From contig CDMY01000561.1 of assembly GCA_001179505.1 (NCBI GenBank), positions 1 to 51,696 of the forward strand: a stretch of 51,696 nucleotides of DNA, given 5' to 3'. Each line of letters starts with the position of its first letter. The stretch's first letter is position 1. Below, piece by piece: positions 32,128 through 38,774 of the stretch. The position numbers were made by a program, and so were the translations under genes. A model generated the notes under the pieces. It made no database searches. It saw only the letters and a list, made by a program, of their open reading frames with translations, and was not told where the DNA came from. Source of the DNA: Vitrella brassicaformis CCMP3155 (lineage: Eukaryota > Protista > Chromerida).

Positions 32128-33345
32128 TGGGATGGACTCGACTAGTGTACCATCAGCTGAACAAAAGTCCGTCCAAGCAACCGTGCAAAGCGTTTTCACA
32201 GCAATGCACTGTTATGACGACCGATCTGTAGCCAGCAGCTTCGGGCAAGAAGCAAGTCGAATTCACTCCAACTCCATGCAAACACACTGATTAATTAATT
32301 AGTCCGGCCCTGCCCCTTCCTCTCCATCCAGTACTCTCGCCGTGTTTTGCCGGCCGGGCCTTCCTAGAGACCAAAAATACTCCCGAAAAAACGCGACGAG
32401 CAAACCCATCCATGCCGATGGCAGGAACAACCAATGTAGGCGGCCAATCCAATCCAACCATGGGTGGAAAAACGTACGTCTGTGGAAAAAGAACACAGCG
32501 GCTGTGCTGTACTCGACCGTGCTGGTGAGTGAGATATGGACAAGTCAAGTCACCCATCCAGGCTCCCGTAGCTCCCACATATAAAGCGCCTTCACGTCAG
32601 GAGACAGTGAGTGAGTCCGTCCGACGCACATGCATCAATCAAAAGGCGGTATGTCGATCCAGGCGGTTGAGCACTATCACACCCAAAACCGGTCCTTTCT
32701 CTGTCCATGTCGCGTATGCAGCCAGGATGCATGGAATGGGACGAACACCTGTACACACATGCAGCCAGGCACCACACCGACGGAGCGTTAGCCCACACGC
32801 ACCCTCACAATACCACGTGGCATCCACACCACACCAGACAGACCAGAAACAGCCAGCCGAAAAATCTGTCATAAACACACAGTGACGGGCAGTCAGGTCG
32901 ATACACACGCGCAGCGAGCGAGAAATCGATGCAGCGCGCGGTGTTCCTTTTTTCTTTTATGTACACGCGTCCACGCCATGCCAGGAGGCAATCCACCCAT
33001 CCATCCATCCATCCATGCCACAGTGCCATCCATCCATTCGCTCACCCAATCAATATTCACACTCGACCCATGCTCCCTTCCCTACTGCATGCAATGTCTG
33101 ACCGTTTGTCTGTGTCTCTCTGTGTCTCTCCGCACATGCACACCCAATCCCGCTCGCTGCGCGTGAGGGCCCTGTCCGCCCGGAGACCCGCTCACCCATC
33201 CACTCTCTCACGGAAAAATAGTCGCTTCCACGGAGGGGCGACCGGCATATACACACATACATACACATACATCAACACGCACCAATACACATATATATGG
33301 GTATACGCACGGCACGGCACACACACGTGTGAGTATGATAGCAGG

Positions 33346-36300
33346 TCAGTAGGCCTCCAGGTGGTATCGGTGTTCGCCCTTCATCTGCCGGATGATGCTG
33401 CCGCCGTCACAGATGCCCTCACTACACTTGATCAGAGCAGTCTTCAACAAGGAACCAACCACACGCACACGAAGAGATTGCTTCATATATGTGCCCATGT
33501 AGGTGTATATATGTGTGTGTGCATTCTATGCCCACCTCCATTTGGTTGAGGATCTTGCCGCTCGATCCGCAGTAGAAGAACTGGCAGTCGGGCCGCTGCA
33601 GCAGCTCCCACACAGCGGCGCCGTTCTCAGCTATCCTGCAACCACACAAAGCACACAAAGCACAGACACACACAGATGCATAGATAGATGGCCCAACGAG
33701 ACTCTTCTTCTGTGTGTGGCCGATGCGCCTGCTTACTTGTCGTGTATGTAGACCTTCTTCTTGGGGTCGTCCCGCGAGAAGGCGTAGAAGGAGGCCGACA
33801 CGCCGCCGTCCTGGATGTCCTCCTGACACACGAAGTCCTTGGACGCGTGCCGACACCCGTGCACCAACACAAAGTCGCCAGACAGACCCCTGAACATGCG
33901 CAGGCAGATAGATAGACGACCATGTGGGGACGATTGGATGCGCCAGTGGGTAGGTGGGTGGGTGGGTGGCTGACCTGTCCTTCCGTTCTTGCAGGAACGC
34001 TCTGACCGGCGCGAAGCCTGAGCCGACCGTCACGCACACCATGGGGGTGTTGCCGTCCATCGGATAGTTGAACACACCCTTGCGGAGCTGATGACAGACA
34101 ACACACAACACCATGTATAGACAACGCAAAGCACAACACACATGTGATCGATCTATTGACCGTGAGAATCTCCTTCCTCCATGTGTGTCGTGTCGGTCGC
34201 CTTGCCCTACCTTTCCTGCAATGGGTGTGGTTTGGATGTACTCGAGCGGCTGTCTGCAGATGTGTCCCGTGCAAAGGCCGCCCGGGACGTCCACCACCAG
34301 CAGCTCGATCTCATCGGGGCAGCGCGTGTCGGACGACGCTATGCTGTAGAACCGCGGGTGGATAATGTCACACGCAGACACTATCTGCAGGCAGCACACA
34401 TGATTGGTGATTGACACACACACACCGAGAGGAGAGGGAGACCAGACCGTCCGAAGGCATCCATGTATGTGTCCCTCTGTGGCTCATCCTCCCTCACCTC
34501 TGAGAAAGAGTACTTGCCCTTGGGCAGCGACATGATGGCCTCGGCGGCATTCTTGTGCGCCACGGCCTCAGGCGGTACGAATCCCGTGTCCGGGCTTACC
34601 AGCCGCCGCAAGTAGTACGGCACCGGCCCGTTGAGATCCACAAACTGCGACAGCAGCCGGTGCAGCGTCATGGGCATGCCGGGGAAGGCCCGCAGCGGGT
34701 CCTCGCTCGTCACCTCCACCAGCTCCTCGTGGGCTCTCATGGGGTCCTTGCCCAGCCACATGAGCAGCCGATCGACCAGCTCTGGTGGGTTGCAGGGCAC
34801 CAGGCCGAAGTGGTCGCCTGTGCGGTAGGTGCTGGGGCCGCCGGCGGCGCCGGATGGGACGGTGAACTTGAAGACGTACTGGGCGGGCTTGTATCCTTCT
34901 GGGGTCACGCGAACGCGGTCCTTGACGTGAATCTCGTCGAAGCCTGGTTGACACAGGCAGTGTCACACAAACACAGACAGGTGTGGGTGTCTGGTTCCCA
35001 AGCATCGAATCCATCTTTGTGGGTGTGTTAGTTACCGATGGGAATGAGTGTTTTGCAATGCTCCATGGCCGGTGGCGACACGGGTGTGGTGGCAGGCTTG
35101 ACGTGGATGAGCTTGGTGGCCGGGAGGTGCCACTGGTCCTTCTCGAAGCGGTGGTTGTAGTGCGTGTGGAACAGATGGTGACGCAGGTGCTCGTCCTTTA
35201 ACTCCCCTGCACCACACACACACACACACACATGCATATGGATGCATAGGGATTGATGGATGGATGGCTGCAGGTGTTCATTTGCGTCGGTCGGCTCGGT
35301 TCACTCACCCTTGTACAGTCTTTCGACGGCTGGGGTCTCGTGTGAAGCGAAGTATGTGGCCTTCTCGTCTCGCTTGTATAGCTCCTGCTGCCGCTTCTGT
35401 ATCTCCTTGAGGTCGAGCGCCCGCGGGTTGCCGGCACCGCCCACACAGCCACCCTCACAGTTCATCACCTGCAGGCACCAATGCGTTAATGCATGCATCC
35501 ACTGGATGTATATCGATGGATAGATGTTATGTGTGTGGGGGCGGGGGAAGGGAAGGTCGCGTGCCTTACCTCGATCATGTGGTACTTGTCCATGTGCGGG
35601 AGGACCTCCGAGAGGTGGTCCATGCCGTTGACGATGGCCACCTTGATCTCCACACCCTCCTTGACCGGCAGCACCAGCTCCTTGACGTCACCCTACCACA
35701 CACGACACGGACACAGACAGAAACACCACACGACACATGTGCCTATGTATGTGCTGTACAGGCCTCCATCCATCCATCCATCCCATGATGGCTGTCAATG
35801 CACCTACCTGTTGTCTGGCGGGCTGGAGGGAAGCGTGTGGCGGTTCGTTGCCCGTCACCATCTTGTACGCCGTCCGAGCGGCCGCCTCAAGCACACCTAC
35901 ACACACACAGAGAGAGAGACACAGAGACACAGAAGCAAGTATGTGCACACGCGAGATGAGCACATCCTGTGCAGTGCTGCGTGTGCGTACCCCCCGACGC
36001 GCCGAAGATGACGGCTCCTCCCGAATGTTCGGCGAACGGCTGGTCGAAGTGGAGCTTCTGTGTGTTGTTCTTGGCGGCCTCGAGGTCGAAGCTGCCCTGG
36101 TCCATCAACTCCTTGGTCGTTATCACAGCGTCTACACACAGACACACAGACAGACAGACAGACAGATAGGCGCACCTGTTGTGTGTGTGTGTCTGTGTGG
36201 GTGGATGGAAGATCAGATCGTACCAACGGCGTGTTCGAGCTGGACGCGCTGGACCTCGTCCTTCTTGGCGATGCAGGGCATGACCGACACCATGAAGATG

Positions 36301-37666
36301 TCATCAGCCGACACACCCTTCTGCGAAGCCCAGTGATGCTTCACTGCACACACACACATCACACACAGATAGAGAGAGAGGGAGAGCAACCCCACGCACC
36401 CAAAGCCACCCCACTCCCCCACCTACCGAGTGCACCGAGCATGGCCTGGGGCGACTTGCAGGTGGACAGATGAGGGATAAGGTGGGGGTAGTGTTTCTCG
36501 ACCATGTTGATCCAGGCGGGGCAGCAGGAGGTGAACATGGGCAGGGGCGACTCCTGCGAGGGGGCTGTGATGCGCGTGACCAGCTCGGCGGCCTCCTCCA
36601 TGATGCAGATGTCCGCTGCCATATTGGTGTCGAACACCATATCGAACCCCAAGTCGTGCAGACCGTAACAGATCTGATGGATCCACACACGCATTCATGG
36701 GTGGAATATATAGACACACGGAGAGTGAGTGGGTGGTGTGTGGAGTGTGGGTGGTCACTCGCTCTCTCCCTCATTCCTTCATTCACCTGTTCCTCTGTGA
36801 GAACGGACCGTATGGCCGGCGCCACCTGGGCGATGGTCACCTTGCCCTCCTCCTTGAGCTTGCTCAACGTTTCCTGACCAATGAATGGACGCCCACACAC
36901 ACACATGGTCAGACAGGCGTCACGTGACAGACACCTTTCGCTCTCCCTCCCTCCGTCCGTCGTCTCACTCACCCGTATGGGCATGGGTGGTGAGGAGATG
37001 GCGCCAGTGGGGCAGACCTGAGCGCACTTGCCGCAGAGGAGGCACGTCGACTGGTTGAAGAGGAACTTGTCGCCCACAGGACAGGCCTTCTCGCACGCCC
37101 AGCACTCGAGACACTTGGTGGGGTCGAAGGCCAGCGGCGGCTTGTAACCGCACTCGGGGTTCACCGCACGACACTCGTCGCGAAGCCGCGCCACCTCGCC
37201 CACATCGACTATACACACACACACACACATCCATCCATCCACCCATCCAACCAACACACACACGTACCATCGCCCGTGTCTGTCTGCATCTCCCTCCCTC
37301 CCTCGGTGCATACCTACCGTGGATCTCCTGCTGCTTGGGCTGTGTCTGTGCGGCCGCAACAGCAGCGTACGGGAGGCGCCAGGTGAGGGTCCATGGTGCG
37401 TACGATGGCAGGGTGGATGTGGCCGTCACCAGAGGGGGCCGGTGGAAGAACAGCCCCTTCCCCAGCACCCGGCTGTTGCTCACAAACAGCGGCGTCCGCC
37501 GGGCGGCCGACGCGGCCACACTCTGCTGGTGCGTGCGGTCATGTGCCTTGGCGGCGACGGTAGCTGTTGAGATGGCGCGCAGAGGAGGCAGAGCGAGGGC
37601 GAGGGAGCCGGCGGGCAGCCGCAGGGGGGCCGACGCCAGAGTTTGGAGGCTCCTGTTGGTCAGCAT
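33346..37666 (-). CDS. hydA: [FeFe]-hydrogenase (2x[4Fe-4S] plus H-domain) fused to C-terminal CysJ/cytochrome P450 reductase-type FAD/NADPH-binding module; organellar presequence; about 16 exons
   Basis: CLECWACEKACP and CLLCGKCAQVCP; H-cluster motifs FTSCCPAW, MPCIAKKDE, EVMNCEGGCVGGAG; FGASGGVLEAAAR. Then GDHFGLVPCN, PRFYSIAS, GLCTGH, GSGFAPVRAF, HGCR, AFSRDD..KVY, FYCG, RYHLEAY-stop (TGA at 33348-33346). Confidence 0.92.
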
Positions 37667-38117
37667 CTTCTCTCAGTCACTCACAAACGTCTACAAACGT
37701 CGCAATAGCGATAGGTCGCCAGCTGCTTCAGTCAGGCGACGGATTCATCAAACAGTGCTCGAAAGCGGGTCGTTGTCCAAGTCACGCTAGCTGGGAGGCA
37801 GACAGCTTCAAGCAGCGACGTGTGTCGCGAAGTGTCCCAGCGGAATTGGGTCAAATCTGAGCTCGCATTTGGCGGGAGAAGTGAAAGCACATCCCCTTTC
37901 TCGTTGTGGTTCTGATACCCGTGAGTCCCCATCGCCAGTAGTTCTCAGTCGACAATCGTCGCTAGTCGTCACAAGTGAGTCATGGGACACCAGGCTAGGG
38001 AAGGGAAGGTGGCACGGAGATGCACCGTGACATTGCCTCCATCTCACGTGCCGATTGCTGACCAGCATCTTTGCCTCTCGGTGTGTGTCCTCGTGTGTGT
38101 GGTCAGATAGATCAGCC

Positions 38118-38774
38118 ATGACGGACTTCAGCCTGCAGATGTTGATAAAGGACAACCGGGAGGCCCAGGAGGCCAACAAGGCGGCCAAGGAGCTCGACGC
38201 CAGCAAGATGGGCCGCTCTGGGTCGGACGCCTCGACCTCGAGTCAGGAGAGCCTGCCCAAGCCCCCGCCTGCCAGCGTGGTGCCCAACGGCATCCCCGAG
38301 CCGCCACTCTGGGGCGCTTACCGGTCCATCAAGGACATGGTCTGGAAGAAACTATTCACACCCAAGACGCTCACCGAGCCCGGCGCACAGAAGCCTGCTG
38401 CCGAGCCTGAGAAGGTCAGTCAGTCAGTCACCAAAGGATATCGTCTGTTGTCTTGACCTGGTCTCTCTGTGTGTGTGTGTCAGCAGCCTGTGTTCAACCC
38501 CGAGGTGCCGCCTGAGAAGGAGCAGCCTGCCGGGTGCAGCGGTGGCGTGCATCTGCCGCAGCCGGGCCTCCACGACGCCCACGGCAAACCTGTGGGCGGC
38601 ATTACCTTCGAGCACATCCGTGCCCGCGGCCGGTCCATGTCTGAGGAGATCCAGCACACGAGCGACGCCGTGAGCCCTCCGGCATCGCCCACCCACACTG
38701 GCCCCCTGCCGCCGCCCGTGGCCGTCAAGACGCCCGAGTATGACATGTCCGGCCACAAGGTCTACCGATACTGA
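38118..38774 (+). CDS. Hypothetical Pro-rich protein, 2 coding exons, divergent from the hydrogenase
   Basis: MTDFSLQML..LWGAYRSIKDMVWKKLF..EPEK / QPVFNP..EYDMSGHKVYRY; GC-rich codon usage; probable 5'UTR intron at 37975-38106. Confidence 0.7.

What the first reader, a model, noticed from the sequence alone, without database searches (positions are those of the whole stretch)
33346..37666. [FeFe]-hydrogenase fused directly to an FAD/NADPH reductase module, lacking a flavodoxin domain, in an apparently plastid-bearing alveolate
Seen: one spliced reading frame runs from an Arg/Ala/Ser/Thr-rich presequence of about 115 aa, through two [4Fe-4S] motifs and all three intact H-cluster motifs (TSCCPAW, MPCIAKKDE, EVMNCEGGCVGG), into a CysJ/CPR-like FAD- and NAD(P)-binding half. 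It ends in RYHLEAY. The AFSR..K.Y motif matches the residues that bind the 2'-phosphate of NADPH in CPR/FNR enzymes. No FMN flavodoxin domain lies between the halves. Established: HydA fusions with NAD(P)H-binding modules are known from some anaerobic protists such as breviates. Inference: a self-contained NADPH-to-H2 enzyme, probably mitochondrial and independent of ferredoxin, giving an otherwise aerobic/photosynthetic lineage an anoxic redox valve.
Basis: partly seen in the sequence, partly recalled or inferred. Interest (0 to 1): 0.85.

Follow-up and report, generated by a model that had tools for sequence, protein, structure and literature searches.

The report
Hydrogenase fused to flavodoxin-less NADPH reductase
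The alga Vitrella brassicaformis really does encode one protein that joins a complete hydrogen-making [FeFe]-hydrogenase to an NADPH/FAD reductase module with no FMN (flavodoxin) domain, a stripped-down version of a fusion known from anaerobic protists whose activity nobody has tested.

Summary
Confirmed. The window is a Vitrella brassicaformis CCMP3155 contig. On its minus strand, 37666..33346, sixteen GT-AG exons translate exactly to the deposited 934-aa protein CEM22873.1.

Pfam finds two Fer4 motifs, Fe_hyd_lg_C, Fe_hyd_SSU, FAD_binding_1 and NAD_binding_1, but no flavodoxin, even at E = 10 on the linker. A transcript contig runs from exon 7 across the hydrogenase/reductase junction (intron 35035-34944) to the 3' UTR. 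Chromera velia has a 918-aa orthologue with the same architecture. So this is a real fusion.

The fusion kind is already known: HydA-CysJ "long" hydrogenases occur in parabasalids, breviates, jakobids, Pelomyxa and, here, glaucophytes. In a tree of the reductase halves, all hydrogenase-fused ones form a clade (100/100). The chromerid pair is sister (100/96) to flavodoxin-bearing parabasalid-type fusions. The flavodoxin was therefore lost secondarily.

H-cluster, FAD and NADPH 2'-phosphate motifs are intact, and the reductase half models confidently as a CPR/CysJ FAD-NADPH module.

The proposed path, NADPH to FAD to [4Fe-4S] relay to H-cluster without FMN or ferredoxin, is inference. Mitochondrial targeting is plausible but untested, and I found no RNA support for exons 1-4. 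No paper I could search describes this variant. It is a new variant of a known kind.

The parts
33346..37666 (-). Whole coding region: 16 exons, 934 codons plus stop; protein CEM22873.1 / UniRef A0A0G4G3N6
   Evidence: The concatenated exons translate exactly to P0133. The protein's identity and its 51,696-base contig are given.
37318..37666 (-). Exon 1: N-terminal extension (aa 1-117). Rich in Arg/Ala/Ser/Thr, first acidic residue at 43, no Pfam domain. Putative organellar (mitochondrial-type) presequence.
   Evidence: Composition and hydropathy; no Pfam hit. There is no RNA support, so this exon rests on the gene model and the open frame only.
36973..37208 (-). Exon 2: F-domain with two complete CxxCxxCxxxCP [4Fe-4S] motifs (37113-37078 and 37044-37009)
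   Evidence: Fer4 6.3e-11 and 1.2e-12; motif coordinates.
35309..36873 (-). Exons 3-9: H-domain (Fe_hyd_lg_C) and the start of the small-subunit-like tail. Carries L1 TSCCPAW, L2 MPCIAKKDE and L3 EVMNCEGGCVGG.
   Evidence: RNA contigs confirm junctions E5/E6, E6/E7, E7/E8, E8/E9 and E9/E10.
35036..35206 (-). Exon 10: end of the Fe_hyd_SSU-like tail (HLFHTHYNHRF) plus a linker of about 35 aa (EKDQWHLPATKLIHVKPATTPVSPPAMEHCKTLIPI) that stands where other fusions carry the flavodoxin domain
   Evidence: Alignment with flavodoxin-bearing fusions; no flavodoxin signal; low pLDDT in this stretch of the models.
34944..35035 (-). 92-nt GT-AG intron between the hydrogenase half and the reductase half. 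It sits exactly at the start of the FAD domain (PIG|FDEIH).
   Evidence: Transcript contig L001 joins 35036 to 34943. P0001, an ORF from that contig, reads MEHCKTLIPIGFDEIH across the junction.
34211..34943 (-). Exons 11-12: FAD-binding barrel with an inserted, shortened connecting domain; RFYSIASS at 34354-34331
   Evidence: FAD_binding_1; AF2 model and Foldseek matches to CPR/CysJ modules; alignment to BM3 and CPR.
33346..34087 (-). Exons 13-16: NADPH-binding domain with GSGFAPVRAF, AFSRDDPKKKVY, FFYCGSS and terminal aromatic RYHLEAY
   Evidence: NAD_binding_1 7.1e-08; aligned with CPR AFSRQDPSKKVY. All four introns are confirmed by RNA contigs.
32199..33345 (-). 3' UTR of about 1.15 kb
   Evidence: L001 is collinear with 33443-32199; Logan RNA contigs reach 32700.

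Best explanation
This is a nuclear gene of Vitrella brassicaformis, with an orthologue in Chromera velia, that encodes one polypeptide. From N to C it has: an N-terminal organellar-type extension; an M2-type group A [FeFe]-hydrogenase (two [4Fe-4S] relay clusters plus a complete H-cluster site); a short unstructured linker; and the FAD/NADPH module with a reduced connecting domain of a CysJ/CPR-type diflavin reductase. It descends from the eukaryotic HydA-CysJ fusion and has lost the FMN (flavodoxin) domain. Proposed mechanism (inferred): NADPH gives a hydride to FAD. FAD then hands single electrons directly to the distal [4Fe-4S] cluster of the hydrogenase, within the chain or across a dimer, much as FNR-type flavoproteins reduce Fe-S partners. 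The electrons reach the H-cluster and reduce protons. The reaction is reversible. In an aerobic phototroph the likely use is to vent excess NADPH as H2 in dark anoxia. Shown here: gene structure, the fusion transcript, domain content, intact cofactor motifs, fold, and secondary loss of flavodoxin. Inferred: cofactor loading, the electron path, direction, and compartment.
For: The gene model equals the deposited protein. One transcript contig spans exons 7-16, including the junction between the halves. Chromera Cvel_23382 has the same architecture, 49-55% identical in both halves. The flavodoxin block is missing exactly between the HTHY tail and the PIGFD start, with no remnant and no intron longer than 123 nt to hide one. 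In the reductase-half tree the 14 hydrogenase-fused halves form a clade at 100/100, and the chromerids are sister to 8 flavodoxin-bearing fusions at 100/96. For the HydA halves, an AU test does not reject one clade of all fused enzymes (p 0.856). The four H-cluster cysteines, the proton-relay Cys, K, E and M are present, and the best PDB match is HydA1 8a6t at 2e-82. RFYSIASS, GSGFAP, S-R..K.Y and CG motifs are conserved. The C-half model has pLDDT 89, pTM 0.87, and matches CPR/NOS/MSR/CysJ FAD-NADPH modules at TMq 0.70-0.77. The 819-aa model has pTM 0.79, which suggests a defined packing of the two halves. Bacterial proteins that join an Fe-S domain directly to the same FAD/NAD module without flavodoxin exist (P0134, P0137, P0149). 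HydEF and HydG are reported for this genome (PMC8003979).
Against: No enzymology exists for this protein or, as far as I could read, for any flavodoxin-less HydA fusion. In diflavin reductases FMN is the obligatory one-electron exit, so its loss could instead mean loss of coupling. NADPH (about -320 mV) to H2 (about -414 mV at pH 7) is uphill, so uptake is thermodynamically favoured; the title of the T. vaginalis study (Smutna 2022, seen only as a citation) points to uptake for a cytosolic enzyme there. I had no model coordinates, so the FAD-to-cluster distance is unknown. Exons 1-4 and the presequence lack RNA support in my data. One transcript contig carries a 4-nt deletion in exon 9 that would break the frame. 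The L3 motif variant MNCEGGC is unique to chromerids among 228 HydAs examined.
Confidence: 0.55

Rival explanations
1. The same protein works physiologically in the other direction. It takes up H2, made by another hydrogenase or by neighbours, and reduces NADP+ to supply NADPH.
For: The reaction is thermodynamically downhill. The title of Smutna et al. 2022 (cited) proposes hydrogen uptake for a cytosolic ferredoxin-independent hydrogenase in T. vaginalis. The architecture is equally compatible with both directions.
Against: Chromerids are reported to carry PFO/PNO, PFL and maturases, an H2-evolving fermentative set like that of Chlamydomonas (PMC6732389; PMC8003979). No second hydrogenase was looked for. 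Group A enzymes with the proton-relay Cys are typically good H2 producers.
Confidence: 0.2
2. The FAD/NADPH module does not feed the hydrogenase clusters directly. A separate small carrier (free flavodoxin or ferredoxin) shuttles electrons, so the fusion is a tethered FNR plus hydrogenase pair rather than a self-contained enzyme.
For: In all characterised diflavin reductases FAD passes electrons only to FMN. The FMN domain is cleanly missing. The connecting domain, which normally positions the FMN domain, is kept although shortened.
Against: Fusion to the hydrogenase is conserved in two genera after the flavodoxin loss. pTM of 0.79 for the two-module model suggests direct packing. Fe-S-domain/FAD/NAD proteins without FMN exist in bacteria.
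Confidence: 0.15
3. The reductase half is a decaying or re-purposed remnant, for example a redox or oxygen sensor, a protective NADPH oxidase, or a structural appendage. The hydrogenase then works with ferredoxin like ordinary algal HydA.
For: Both chromerid halves sit on long branches. The Pfam FAD_binding_1 score is weak (60 bits against 96-159 in other fusions) and the connecting domain is shortened.
Against: Every FAD- and NADPH-contact motif checked is intact and conserved between Vitrella and Chromera. The half is modelled at pLDDT above 90 over most of its length. The open frame is preserved across 6 exons.
Confidence: 0.08
4. Annotation artefact: two neighbouring genes (a hydrogenase and an FNR-like reductase) were wrongly merged.
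For: The prokaryote-style gene caller split transcript contig L001 into two ORFs. The reductase ORF P0001 begins at an internal Met. L001 has a 4-nt deletion in exon 9.
Against: L001 is one contig across the junction with a spliced GT-AG intron. The genome frame is continuous. The Logan RNA contig over exon 9 shows no gap. Chromera has the same single ORF. There is no room or signal for a promoter in the 92-nt intron.
Confidence: 0.02

Closest known systems
   Same: A group A H-domain with a small-subunit-like tail is fused at its C-terminus to a CysJ/CPR-type FAD_binding_1 + NAD_binding_1 module. The reductase halves form one clade that includes the chromerids (PMC4989108; PMC10579272). The only AlphaFold DB cluster that matches both halves of the model is such a fusion.
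   Different: Those proteins carry a flavodoxin (FMN) domain between the halves, often have an extra N-terminal 2Fe-2S/NuoG-like domain, and are predicted to be cytosolic without a presequence (PMC4989108). The chromerid protein has no flavodoxin, only two [4Fe-4S] motifs, a shortened connecting domain and an N-terminal extension of 115-140 aa.
Diflavin reductases: E. coli CysJ (SiR-FP), NADPH-cytochrome P450 reductase, P450 BM3 reductase, NOS reductase, methionine synthase reductase
   Same: The fold of the FAD/NADPH module including the connecting domain (Foldseek TMq 0.70-0.77, E about 1e-28), and the motifs RxYSxxSS, GxGxAP, SR..K.Y and CG.
   Different: There is no FMN domain, identity is 18-30%, the connecting domain is about 27 residues shorter than in BM3, and the presumed electron acceptor is an Fe-S relay in the same chain.
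Pyruvate:NADP+ oxidoreductase (PNO) of Euglena, Cryptosporidium and chromerids
   Same: The same evolutionary logic: a ferredoxin-dependent Fe-S enzyme is fused to a CPR-type NADP module so that electrons pass between Fe-S clusters and NADP(H) (PMC6732389; Euglena PNO is a structural hit).
   Different: PNO keeps the FMN domain and runs towards NADPH. Some PNOs have lost the whole reductase module (PMC6993867), not just its FMN part.
Bacterial 'sulfite reductase subunit alpha'-like proteins with a PF04060 Fe-S domain + FAD_binding_1 + NAD_binding_1 (for example Limnoglobus roseus, Planctomycetes; P0134, P0137, P0149)
   Same: A CysJ-type FAD/NAD module joined directly to an Fe-S domain with no flavodoxin. 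This is a precedent for FAD-to-Fe-S transfer in this family.
   Different: They have an independent origin, branching inside bacterial CysJ and not with the hydrogenase fusions. They have no hydrogenase domain and are uncharacterised.
Chlamydomonas HydA1/HydA2 and the multimeric NAD(P)-linked [FeFe]-hydrogenases (HydABC, Hnd)
   Same: The H-cluster site (Chlamydomonas HydA1 6.4e-73; HydA1 of bifurcating HydABC 2e-82). They occur in a phototroph or use NAD(P)H respectively.
   Different: Chlamydomonas HydA has no F-domain and depends on ferredoxin. HydABC and Hnd use separate NuoE/F-like FMN subunits, not an FNR-like FAD module in the same chain.

Membership tests
Group A [FeFe]-hydrogenase (HydA) | H-domain recognised by Fe_hyd_lg_C, plus the small-subunit-like tail | tested here: met
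   PF02906 6.7e-69 (232.7 bits against a cut-off of 22.1) and PF02256 1.3e-10; PDB HydA chains score 2e-82 to 1e-60.
Group A [FeFe]-hydrogenase (HydA) | H-cluster motifs L1 TSCCPxW, L2 MPCxxKxxE and L3 ExMxCxxGCxxG, with all four ligand Cys and the proton-relay Cys | tested here: met
   TSCCPAW, MPCIAKKDE and EVMNCEGGCVGG are present. The two residues flanking the first L3 Cys (N, E) are unusual: 2 of 228 sequences, both chromerid.
Group A [FeFe]-hydrogenase (HydA) | Maturases HydE, HydF and HydG in the same genome | not tested
PMC8003979 tabulates HYDE/HYDF (fused) and HYDG as present in V. brassicaformis CCMP3155; scan note s1-221866 mentions a HydE-HydF gene.
Group A [FeFe]-hydrogenase (HydA) | H2 evolution or uptake activity | not testable with these tools
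   This needs biochemistry.
Eukaryotic HydA-CysJ fusion hydrogenases | C-terminal FAD_binding_1 + NAD_binding_1 module in the same polypeptide and transcript | tested here: met
Eukaryotic HydA-CysJ fusion hydrogenases | Flavodoxin (FMN) domain between the hydrogenase and the FAD domain | tested here: not met
   No PF00258 at E<=0.001 on the whole protein or at E<=10 on the linker. The block is a gap in the alignment. Other fusions score 1e-18 to 6e-35.
Eukaryotic HydA-CysJ fusion hydrogenases | Common descent of the reductase half | tested here: met
   Clade of 14 fused halves at 100/100, with the chromerids nested at 100/96. The HydA half is not resolved, but one clade is not rejected.
Diflavin reductase (CysJ/CPR) family | Both FMN and FAD/NADPH modules | tested here: not met
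   Only the FAD/NADPH module with its connecting domain is present.
Diflavin reductase (CysJ/CPR) family | NADPH 2'-phosphate binding S-R...K.Y and FAD motif RxYSxxSS | tested here: met
   AFSRDDPKKKVY aligns with CPR AFSRQDPSKKVY, and RFYSIASS aligns with RYYSISSS. The assignment of these residues to the 2'-phosphate comes from established CPR structures (my knowledge).
Plant-type ferredoxin-NADP+ reductase (two-domain FNR) | FAD barrel and NADP domain without an inserted connecting domain | tested here: not met
   The model has a helical insert of about 100 aa (residues about 104-205 of the C-half model) and matches CPR-type modules best. FNR chains score only about 1e-11.
Nar1/NARFL-type hydrogenase-like proteins | Hydrogenase-like fold that lacks the H-cluster 2Fe-site residues | tested here: not met
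   The H-cluster motifs are complete, so this is not a Nar1-like protein.

The most novel reading that the evidence does not exclude
Chromerids carry a self-contained, FMN-free NADPH:[FeFe]-hydrogenase in which a CPR-type FAD passes single electrons straight into a [4Fe-4S] relay. It is imported into the mitochondrion of an otherwise aerobic phototroph. That would be the smallest known single-chain NADPH-to-H2 enzyme and a natural example of a diflavin reductase rewired to do without its second flavin.
Probability: 0.35. Interest if true: 0.7.

Novelty: new variant of a known kind. Interest (0 to 1): 0.5.

Why it matters
HydA-CysJ fusions are widespread in anaerobic protists, but their electron path and direction are still largely conjecture. 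A natural variant that has lost FMN yet kept every FAD, NADPH and H-cluster residue in two genera is a ready-made experiment on whether FAD can feed an Fe-S relay directly. If it can, the protein is a compact, carrier-free NADPH-to-H2 catalyst of interest for bio-hydrogen engineering. It would also add an NADPH-linked, probably mitochondrial, hydrogen valve to the metabolism of the closest photosynthetic relatives of apicomplexan parasites. If it cannot, it shows how such fusions decay. The gene itself is already in public databases as an uncharacterised protein, and the presence of HydA in Vitrella is already recorded. The advance is the recognition of the architecture and its origin.

Tried and rejected
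1. Two separate genes: rejected by transcript contig L001 and by the Chromera orthologue.

2. A hidden flavodoxin exon: rejected. All introns are 83-123 nt, the transcript lacks it, and there is no Pfam signal at E<=10.

3. Independent recruitment of a plain FNR: rejected by the fold (a connecting domain is present) and by the tree.

4. Nar1-like protein: rejected by the motifs.

5. RNA support for exons 1-4 and the presequence: none found.
- The two small RNA contig sets have no depth there apart from repeat spikes.
- An exact 36-nt exon-1 pattern found nothing in JGI metagenome/metatranscriptome contigs.
- A protein search with residues 1-330 returned only bacterial and algal HydAs at <=47% identity.

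6. The HydA-half phylogeny gave no resolved position. The chromerids sit on a long branch weakly next to a bacterial sequence, so only the AU test was usable.

7. The whole-library phmmer search with the FAD/connecting exon:
- My query wrongly included 13 intron-derived residues at its end.
- It found only the protein itself, Chromera, and a spurious 2418-aa repeat protein at E<1e-10.
- No further flavodoxin-less relatives are visible.

8. Papers:
- Flegontov 2015 (MBE), Stairs 2015 and Smutna 2022 are not held, so I could not check whether they mention the architecture.
- Accession and gene-id searches found no paper.

9. Model coordinates are not exposed, so no FAD-to-cluster distance could be measured.


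Full report
**What is there**

Six-frame translation of 33200-37800 shows, on the minus strand, a chain of short open segments that carry hydrogenase and reductase motifs, separated by stop-rich stretches. Pfam on the individual segments gave Fer4, Fe_hyd_lg_C, Fe_hyd_SSU and FAD_binding_1.

I enumerated GT-AG junctions and compared them with RNA-derived contigs and with a JGI transcript contig (L001). This gave a 16-exon model:
- E1 37666-37318
- E2 37208-36973
- E3 36873-36787
- E4 36673-36427
- E5 36343-36224
- E6 36131-35991
- E7 35896-35808
- E8 35692-35570
- E9 35468-35309
- E10 35206-35036
- E11 34943-34498
- E12 34384-34211
- E13 34087-33975
- E14 33889-33737
- E15 33635-33536
- E16 33441-33346

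All introns are GT-AG and 83-123 nt long. The concatenated exons translate exactly to P0133, which is GenBank CEM22873.1 / UniRef A0A0G4G3N6, an "unnamed protein product" of Vitrella brassicaformis CCMP3155. Its contig is 51,696 bases long, the same length as the window. Vitrella is a photosynthetic alveolate of the Colpodellida (chromerids).

**Is it one gene?**

L001 is a 2,729-nt transcript contig from JGI sample 3300017148. It is collinear with exons 7 to 16 and a 1.15-kb 3' UTR, and it joins 35036 directly to 34943. That is the junction between the hydrogenase tail and the reductase half.

The ORF called on that contig (P0001) starts at an internal Met and reads MEHCKTLIPIG|FDEIH across the splice. 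Logan contigs from two RNA runs independently confirm nine introns.

L001 carries a 4-nt deletion at 35352-35355, which is why a prokaryote-style gene caller split it in two. The Logan RNA contig over the same exon has no gap. I therefore treat the deletion as an assembly error or a variant, but it remains unexplained.

Chromera velia encodes a 918-aa orthologue (Cvel_23382, A0A0G4GU65) with the same domain order. It is 55% identical in the hydrogenase half and 49% in the reductase half. The fusion is real and conserved.

Exons 1-4, including the N-terminal extension, have no transcript support in anything I could reach. They rest on the open frame, canonical splice sites, homology from residue about 141 onward, and the deposited model.

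**Domain content**

On the full protein Pfam reports:

| Domain | Residues | E-value |
|---|---|---|
| Fer4, two motifs | 148-188 | 1.2e-12 |
| Fe_hyd_lg_C | 207-476 | 6.7e-69 |
| Fe_hyd_SSU | 485-537 | 1.3e-10 |
| FAD_binding_1 | two stretches, best 611-684 | 2.4e-16 |
| NAD_binding_1 | 802-895 | 7.1e-08 |

There is no Flavodoxin_1. Six other fusions scanned in the same call score 1e-18 to 6e-35 for that domain; a seventh, P0027, scores only 4.2e-4 (20.9 bits), below the curated cut-off of 25.

An alignment of ten fusions shows the whole flavodoxin block, about 190 columns, as a clean gap in both chromerids. The gap lies between the conserved ...HLFHTHY... tail and the conserved P(I/V)G(F/Y)D start of the FAD domain. 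Scanning the linkers at E<=10 finds nothing flavodoxin-like. No intron is long enough to hide a domain of about 450 nt.

**Catalytic and cofactor sites**

Against solved structures, the hydrogenase half matches HydA1 of a bifurcating HydABC (8a6t, 2e-82), Chlamydomonas HydA1 (6.4e-73) and CpI (about 1e-65).
- L1 (TSCCPAW), L2 (MPCIAKKDE) and L3 (EVMNCEGGCVGG) are present, with all ligand cysteines and the proton-relay cysteine.
- The MEEAAEL, KSPQ and IFGASGG segments align with their counterparts.
- Two chromerid peculiarities stand out. One is an 11-residue deletion in the loop before the GFD motif. The other is the L3 variant MNCEGGC, seen in 2 of 228 HydA sequences, both chromerid.

In the reductase half, RFYSIASS, GSGFAPVRAF, AFSRDDPKKKVY and FFYCGSS align with the FAD- and NADPH-contact motifs of P450 BM3 reductase and CPR. 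For example, CPR has AFSRQDPSKKVY. The protein ends in an aromatic residue (Tyr), as CysJ and FNR do.

An AlphaFold2 model of residues 525-934 has pLDDT 89.2 and pTM 0.87. Its best PDB matches are the FAD/NADPH modules of CPR, NOS, methionine synthase reductase and CysJ (E about 1e-28, TMq 0.70-0.77). TM normalised by target length is about 0.72 for isolated FAD/NADPH modules but about 0.53 for full CPR, so the FMN part is simply missing. The model keeps a shortened helical connecting domain. The linker is of low confidence.

A model of residues 116-934 has pLDDT 89.5 and pTM 0.79. In AlphaFold DB clusters the only entry that matches both halves is a 1,151-aa HydA-CysJ protein.

**Origin**

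By BLAST, after Chromera, the best matches of the reductase half are the reductase halves of flavodoxin-bearing hydrogenase fusions: 127-160 bits, against 122 or less for everything else.

A careful ML tree (54 sequences, LG+C20+F+G4) separates all 14 hydrogenase-fused reductase halves from CysJ, CPR, BM3, nitrate-reductase-fused and Fe-S-domain-fused relatives with 100/100 support. It places the chromerid pair as sister (100/96) to eight fusions of the parabasalid type. That group includes Histomonas meleagridis and the cluster containing Tritrichomonas musculus. Other fused lineages include the glaucophytes Cyanophora and Cyanoptyche.

All outgroups and all other fused lineages carry flavodoxin, so the chromerid state is a secondary loss.

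The hydrogenase-half tree is unresolved, as the literature says is usual (PMC4989108). Even so, constraining all fused HydAs to one clade is not rejected and is even better than the quick free search (p-AU 0.856).

A whole-library phmmer search with the FAD/connecting exon found no other close relative among 1.84 billion cluster representatives. The flavodoxin-less form is so far confined to chromerids.

**Mechanism (inference)**

The parts list is an NADPH site, FAD, two [4Fe-4S] clusters and an H-cluster. This suggests a direct NADP(H)-linked hydrogenase.

Without FMN, FAD must act as the two-electron/one-electron transformer and reduce an Fe-S cluster directly. FNR-type flavoproteins do this with ferredoxin. 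It is presumably also what the bacterial Fe-S-domain/FAD/NAD proteins found here do (P0134, P0137, P0149).

NADPH to H2 is uphill at standard conditions. Evolution therefore needs a reduced NADP pool and low H2, as in dark anoxia. The reverse reaction is favourable.

Rivals are:
- physiological H2 uptake;
- dependence on a free carrier;
- a vestigial or regulatory reductase half.

None is excluded by sequence.

**Targeting**

The extension is about 115-140 aa in Vitrella and about 55-75 aa in Chromera. It is Arg/Ala/Ser/Thr-rich, has its first acidic residue at 43 (Vitrella) or 57 (Chromera), and has no segment hydrophobic enough for an ER signal peptide (maximum 9-residue Kyte-Doolittle mean 1.6-1.8). 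It has no Pfam domain.

Chromerid plastid import needs a signal peptide, so a mitochondrial presequence is the better guess. This is heuristic only. By contrast, CysJ-fused hydrogenases elsewhere are predicted to be cytosolic (PMC4989108).

**Known or new**

Already in the literature:
- HydA-CysJ fusions (PMC4989108; PMC10579272).
- The presence of HydA, fused HydEF, HydG, PFO and PFL in Vitrella (PMC8003979; PMC6732389).
- The use of Vitrella HydA in phylogenies (PMC6993867).

I found no paper describing the missing flavodoxin domain, the presequence, or any biochemistry of the chromerid enzyme. Three relevant papers were not readable.

**Verdict**

This is a new variant of a known kind, of moderate interest.

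Noticed in passing
window 35352-35355 (exon 9); L001 about position 284: The JGI transcript contig L001 lacks 4 nt (genome GCCACATACTTCGC, contig GCCACTTCGC). This shifts the frame inside the Fe_hyd_SSU-like tail and would separate the two halves. A Logan RNA contig over the same exon shows no gap. It could be an assembly error, a strain difference or a rare transcript variant; I could not tell which.
   Followed up: partly
They also share an 11-residue deletion relative to solved HydAs. The effect on the H-cluster environment or oxygen sensitivity is unknown.
   Followed up: partly
window 35765-35783, 36344-36386, about 37288 (introns of the gene): Short low-complexity repeats in the introns, of (TGGA)n/(TG)n type that translate as GWMDGWMD and VCVCVC, give k-mer depth spikes of 10-20x and dozens of loose ends and false joints in both DNA and RNA contig sets. 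They are evidently dispersed throughout the genome.
   Followed up: no
window 37874-38300 (+ strand): A divergently transcribed neighbour is present. RNA contigs join 37974 to 38107 with a GT..AG intron on the + strand. Its first seen base lies 208 bp from the hydrogenase ATG, so the two genes probably share a short bidirectional promoter region (37667-37873).
   Followed up: no
proteins P0134, P0137, P0149, P0243 (bacterial, 519-562 aa): These proteins, labelled 'sulfite reductase subunit alpha', from Planctomycetes and others consist of a PF04060 Fe-S domain plus FAD_binding_1 plus NAD_binding_1 with no flavodoxin. This is an independent, apparently uncharacterised flavodoxin-less branch inside bacterial CysJ.
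   Followed up: partly
proteins P0023 (Cyanophora paradoxa) and P0024/P0253 (Cyanoptyche gloeocystis): Glaucophyte algae also carry HydA-flavodoxin-FAD-NAD fusions of 1,004-1,330 aa. The fusion is therefore not confined to anaerobic heterotrophs.
   Followed up: partly
window 32199-33345: The gene has an unusually long 3' UTR of about 1.15 kb, covered end to end by one transcript contig.
   Followed up: no
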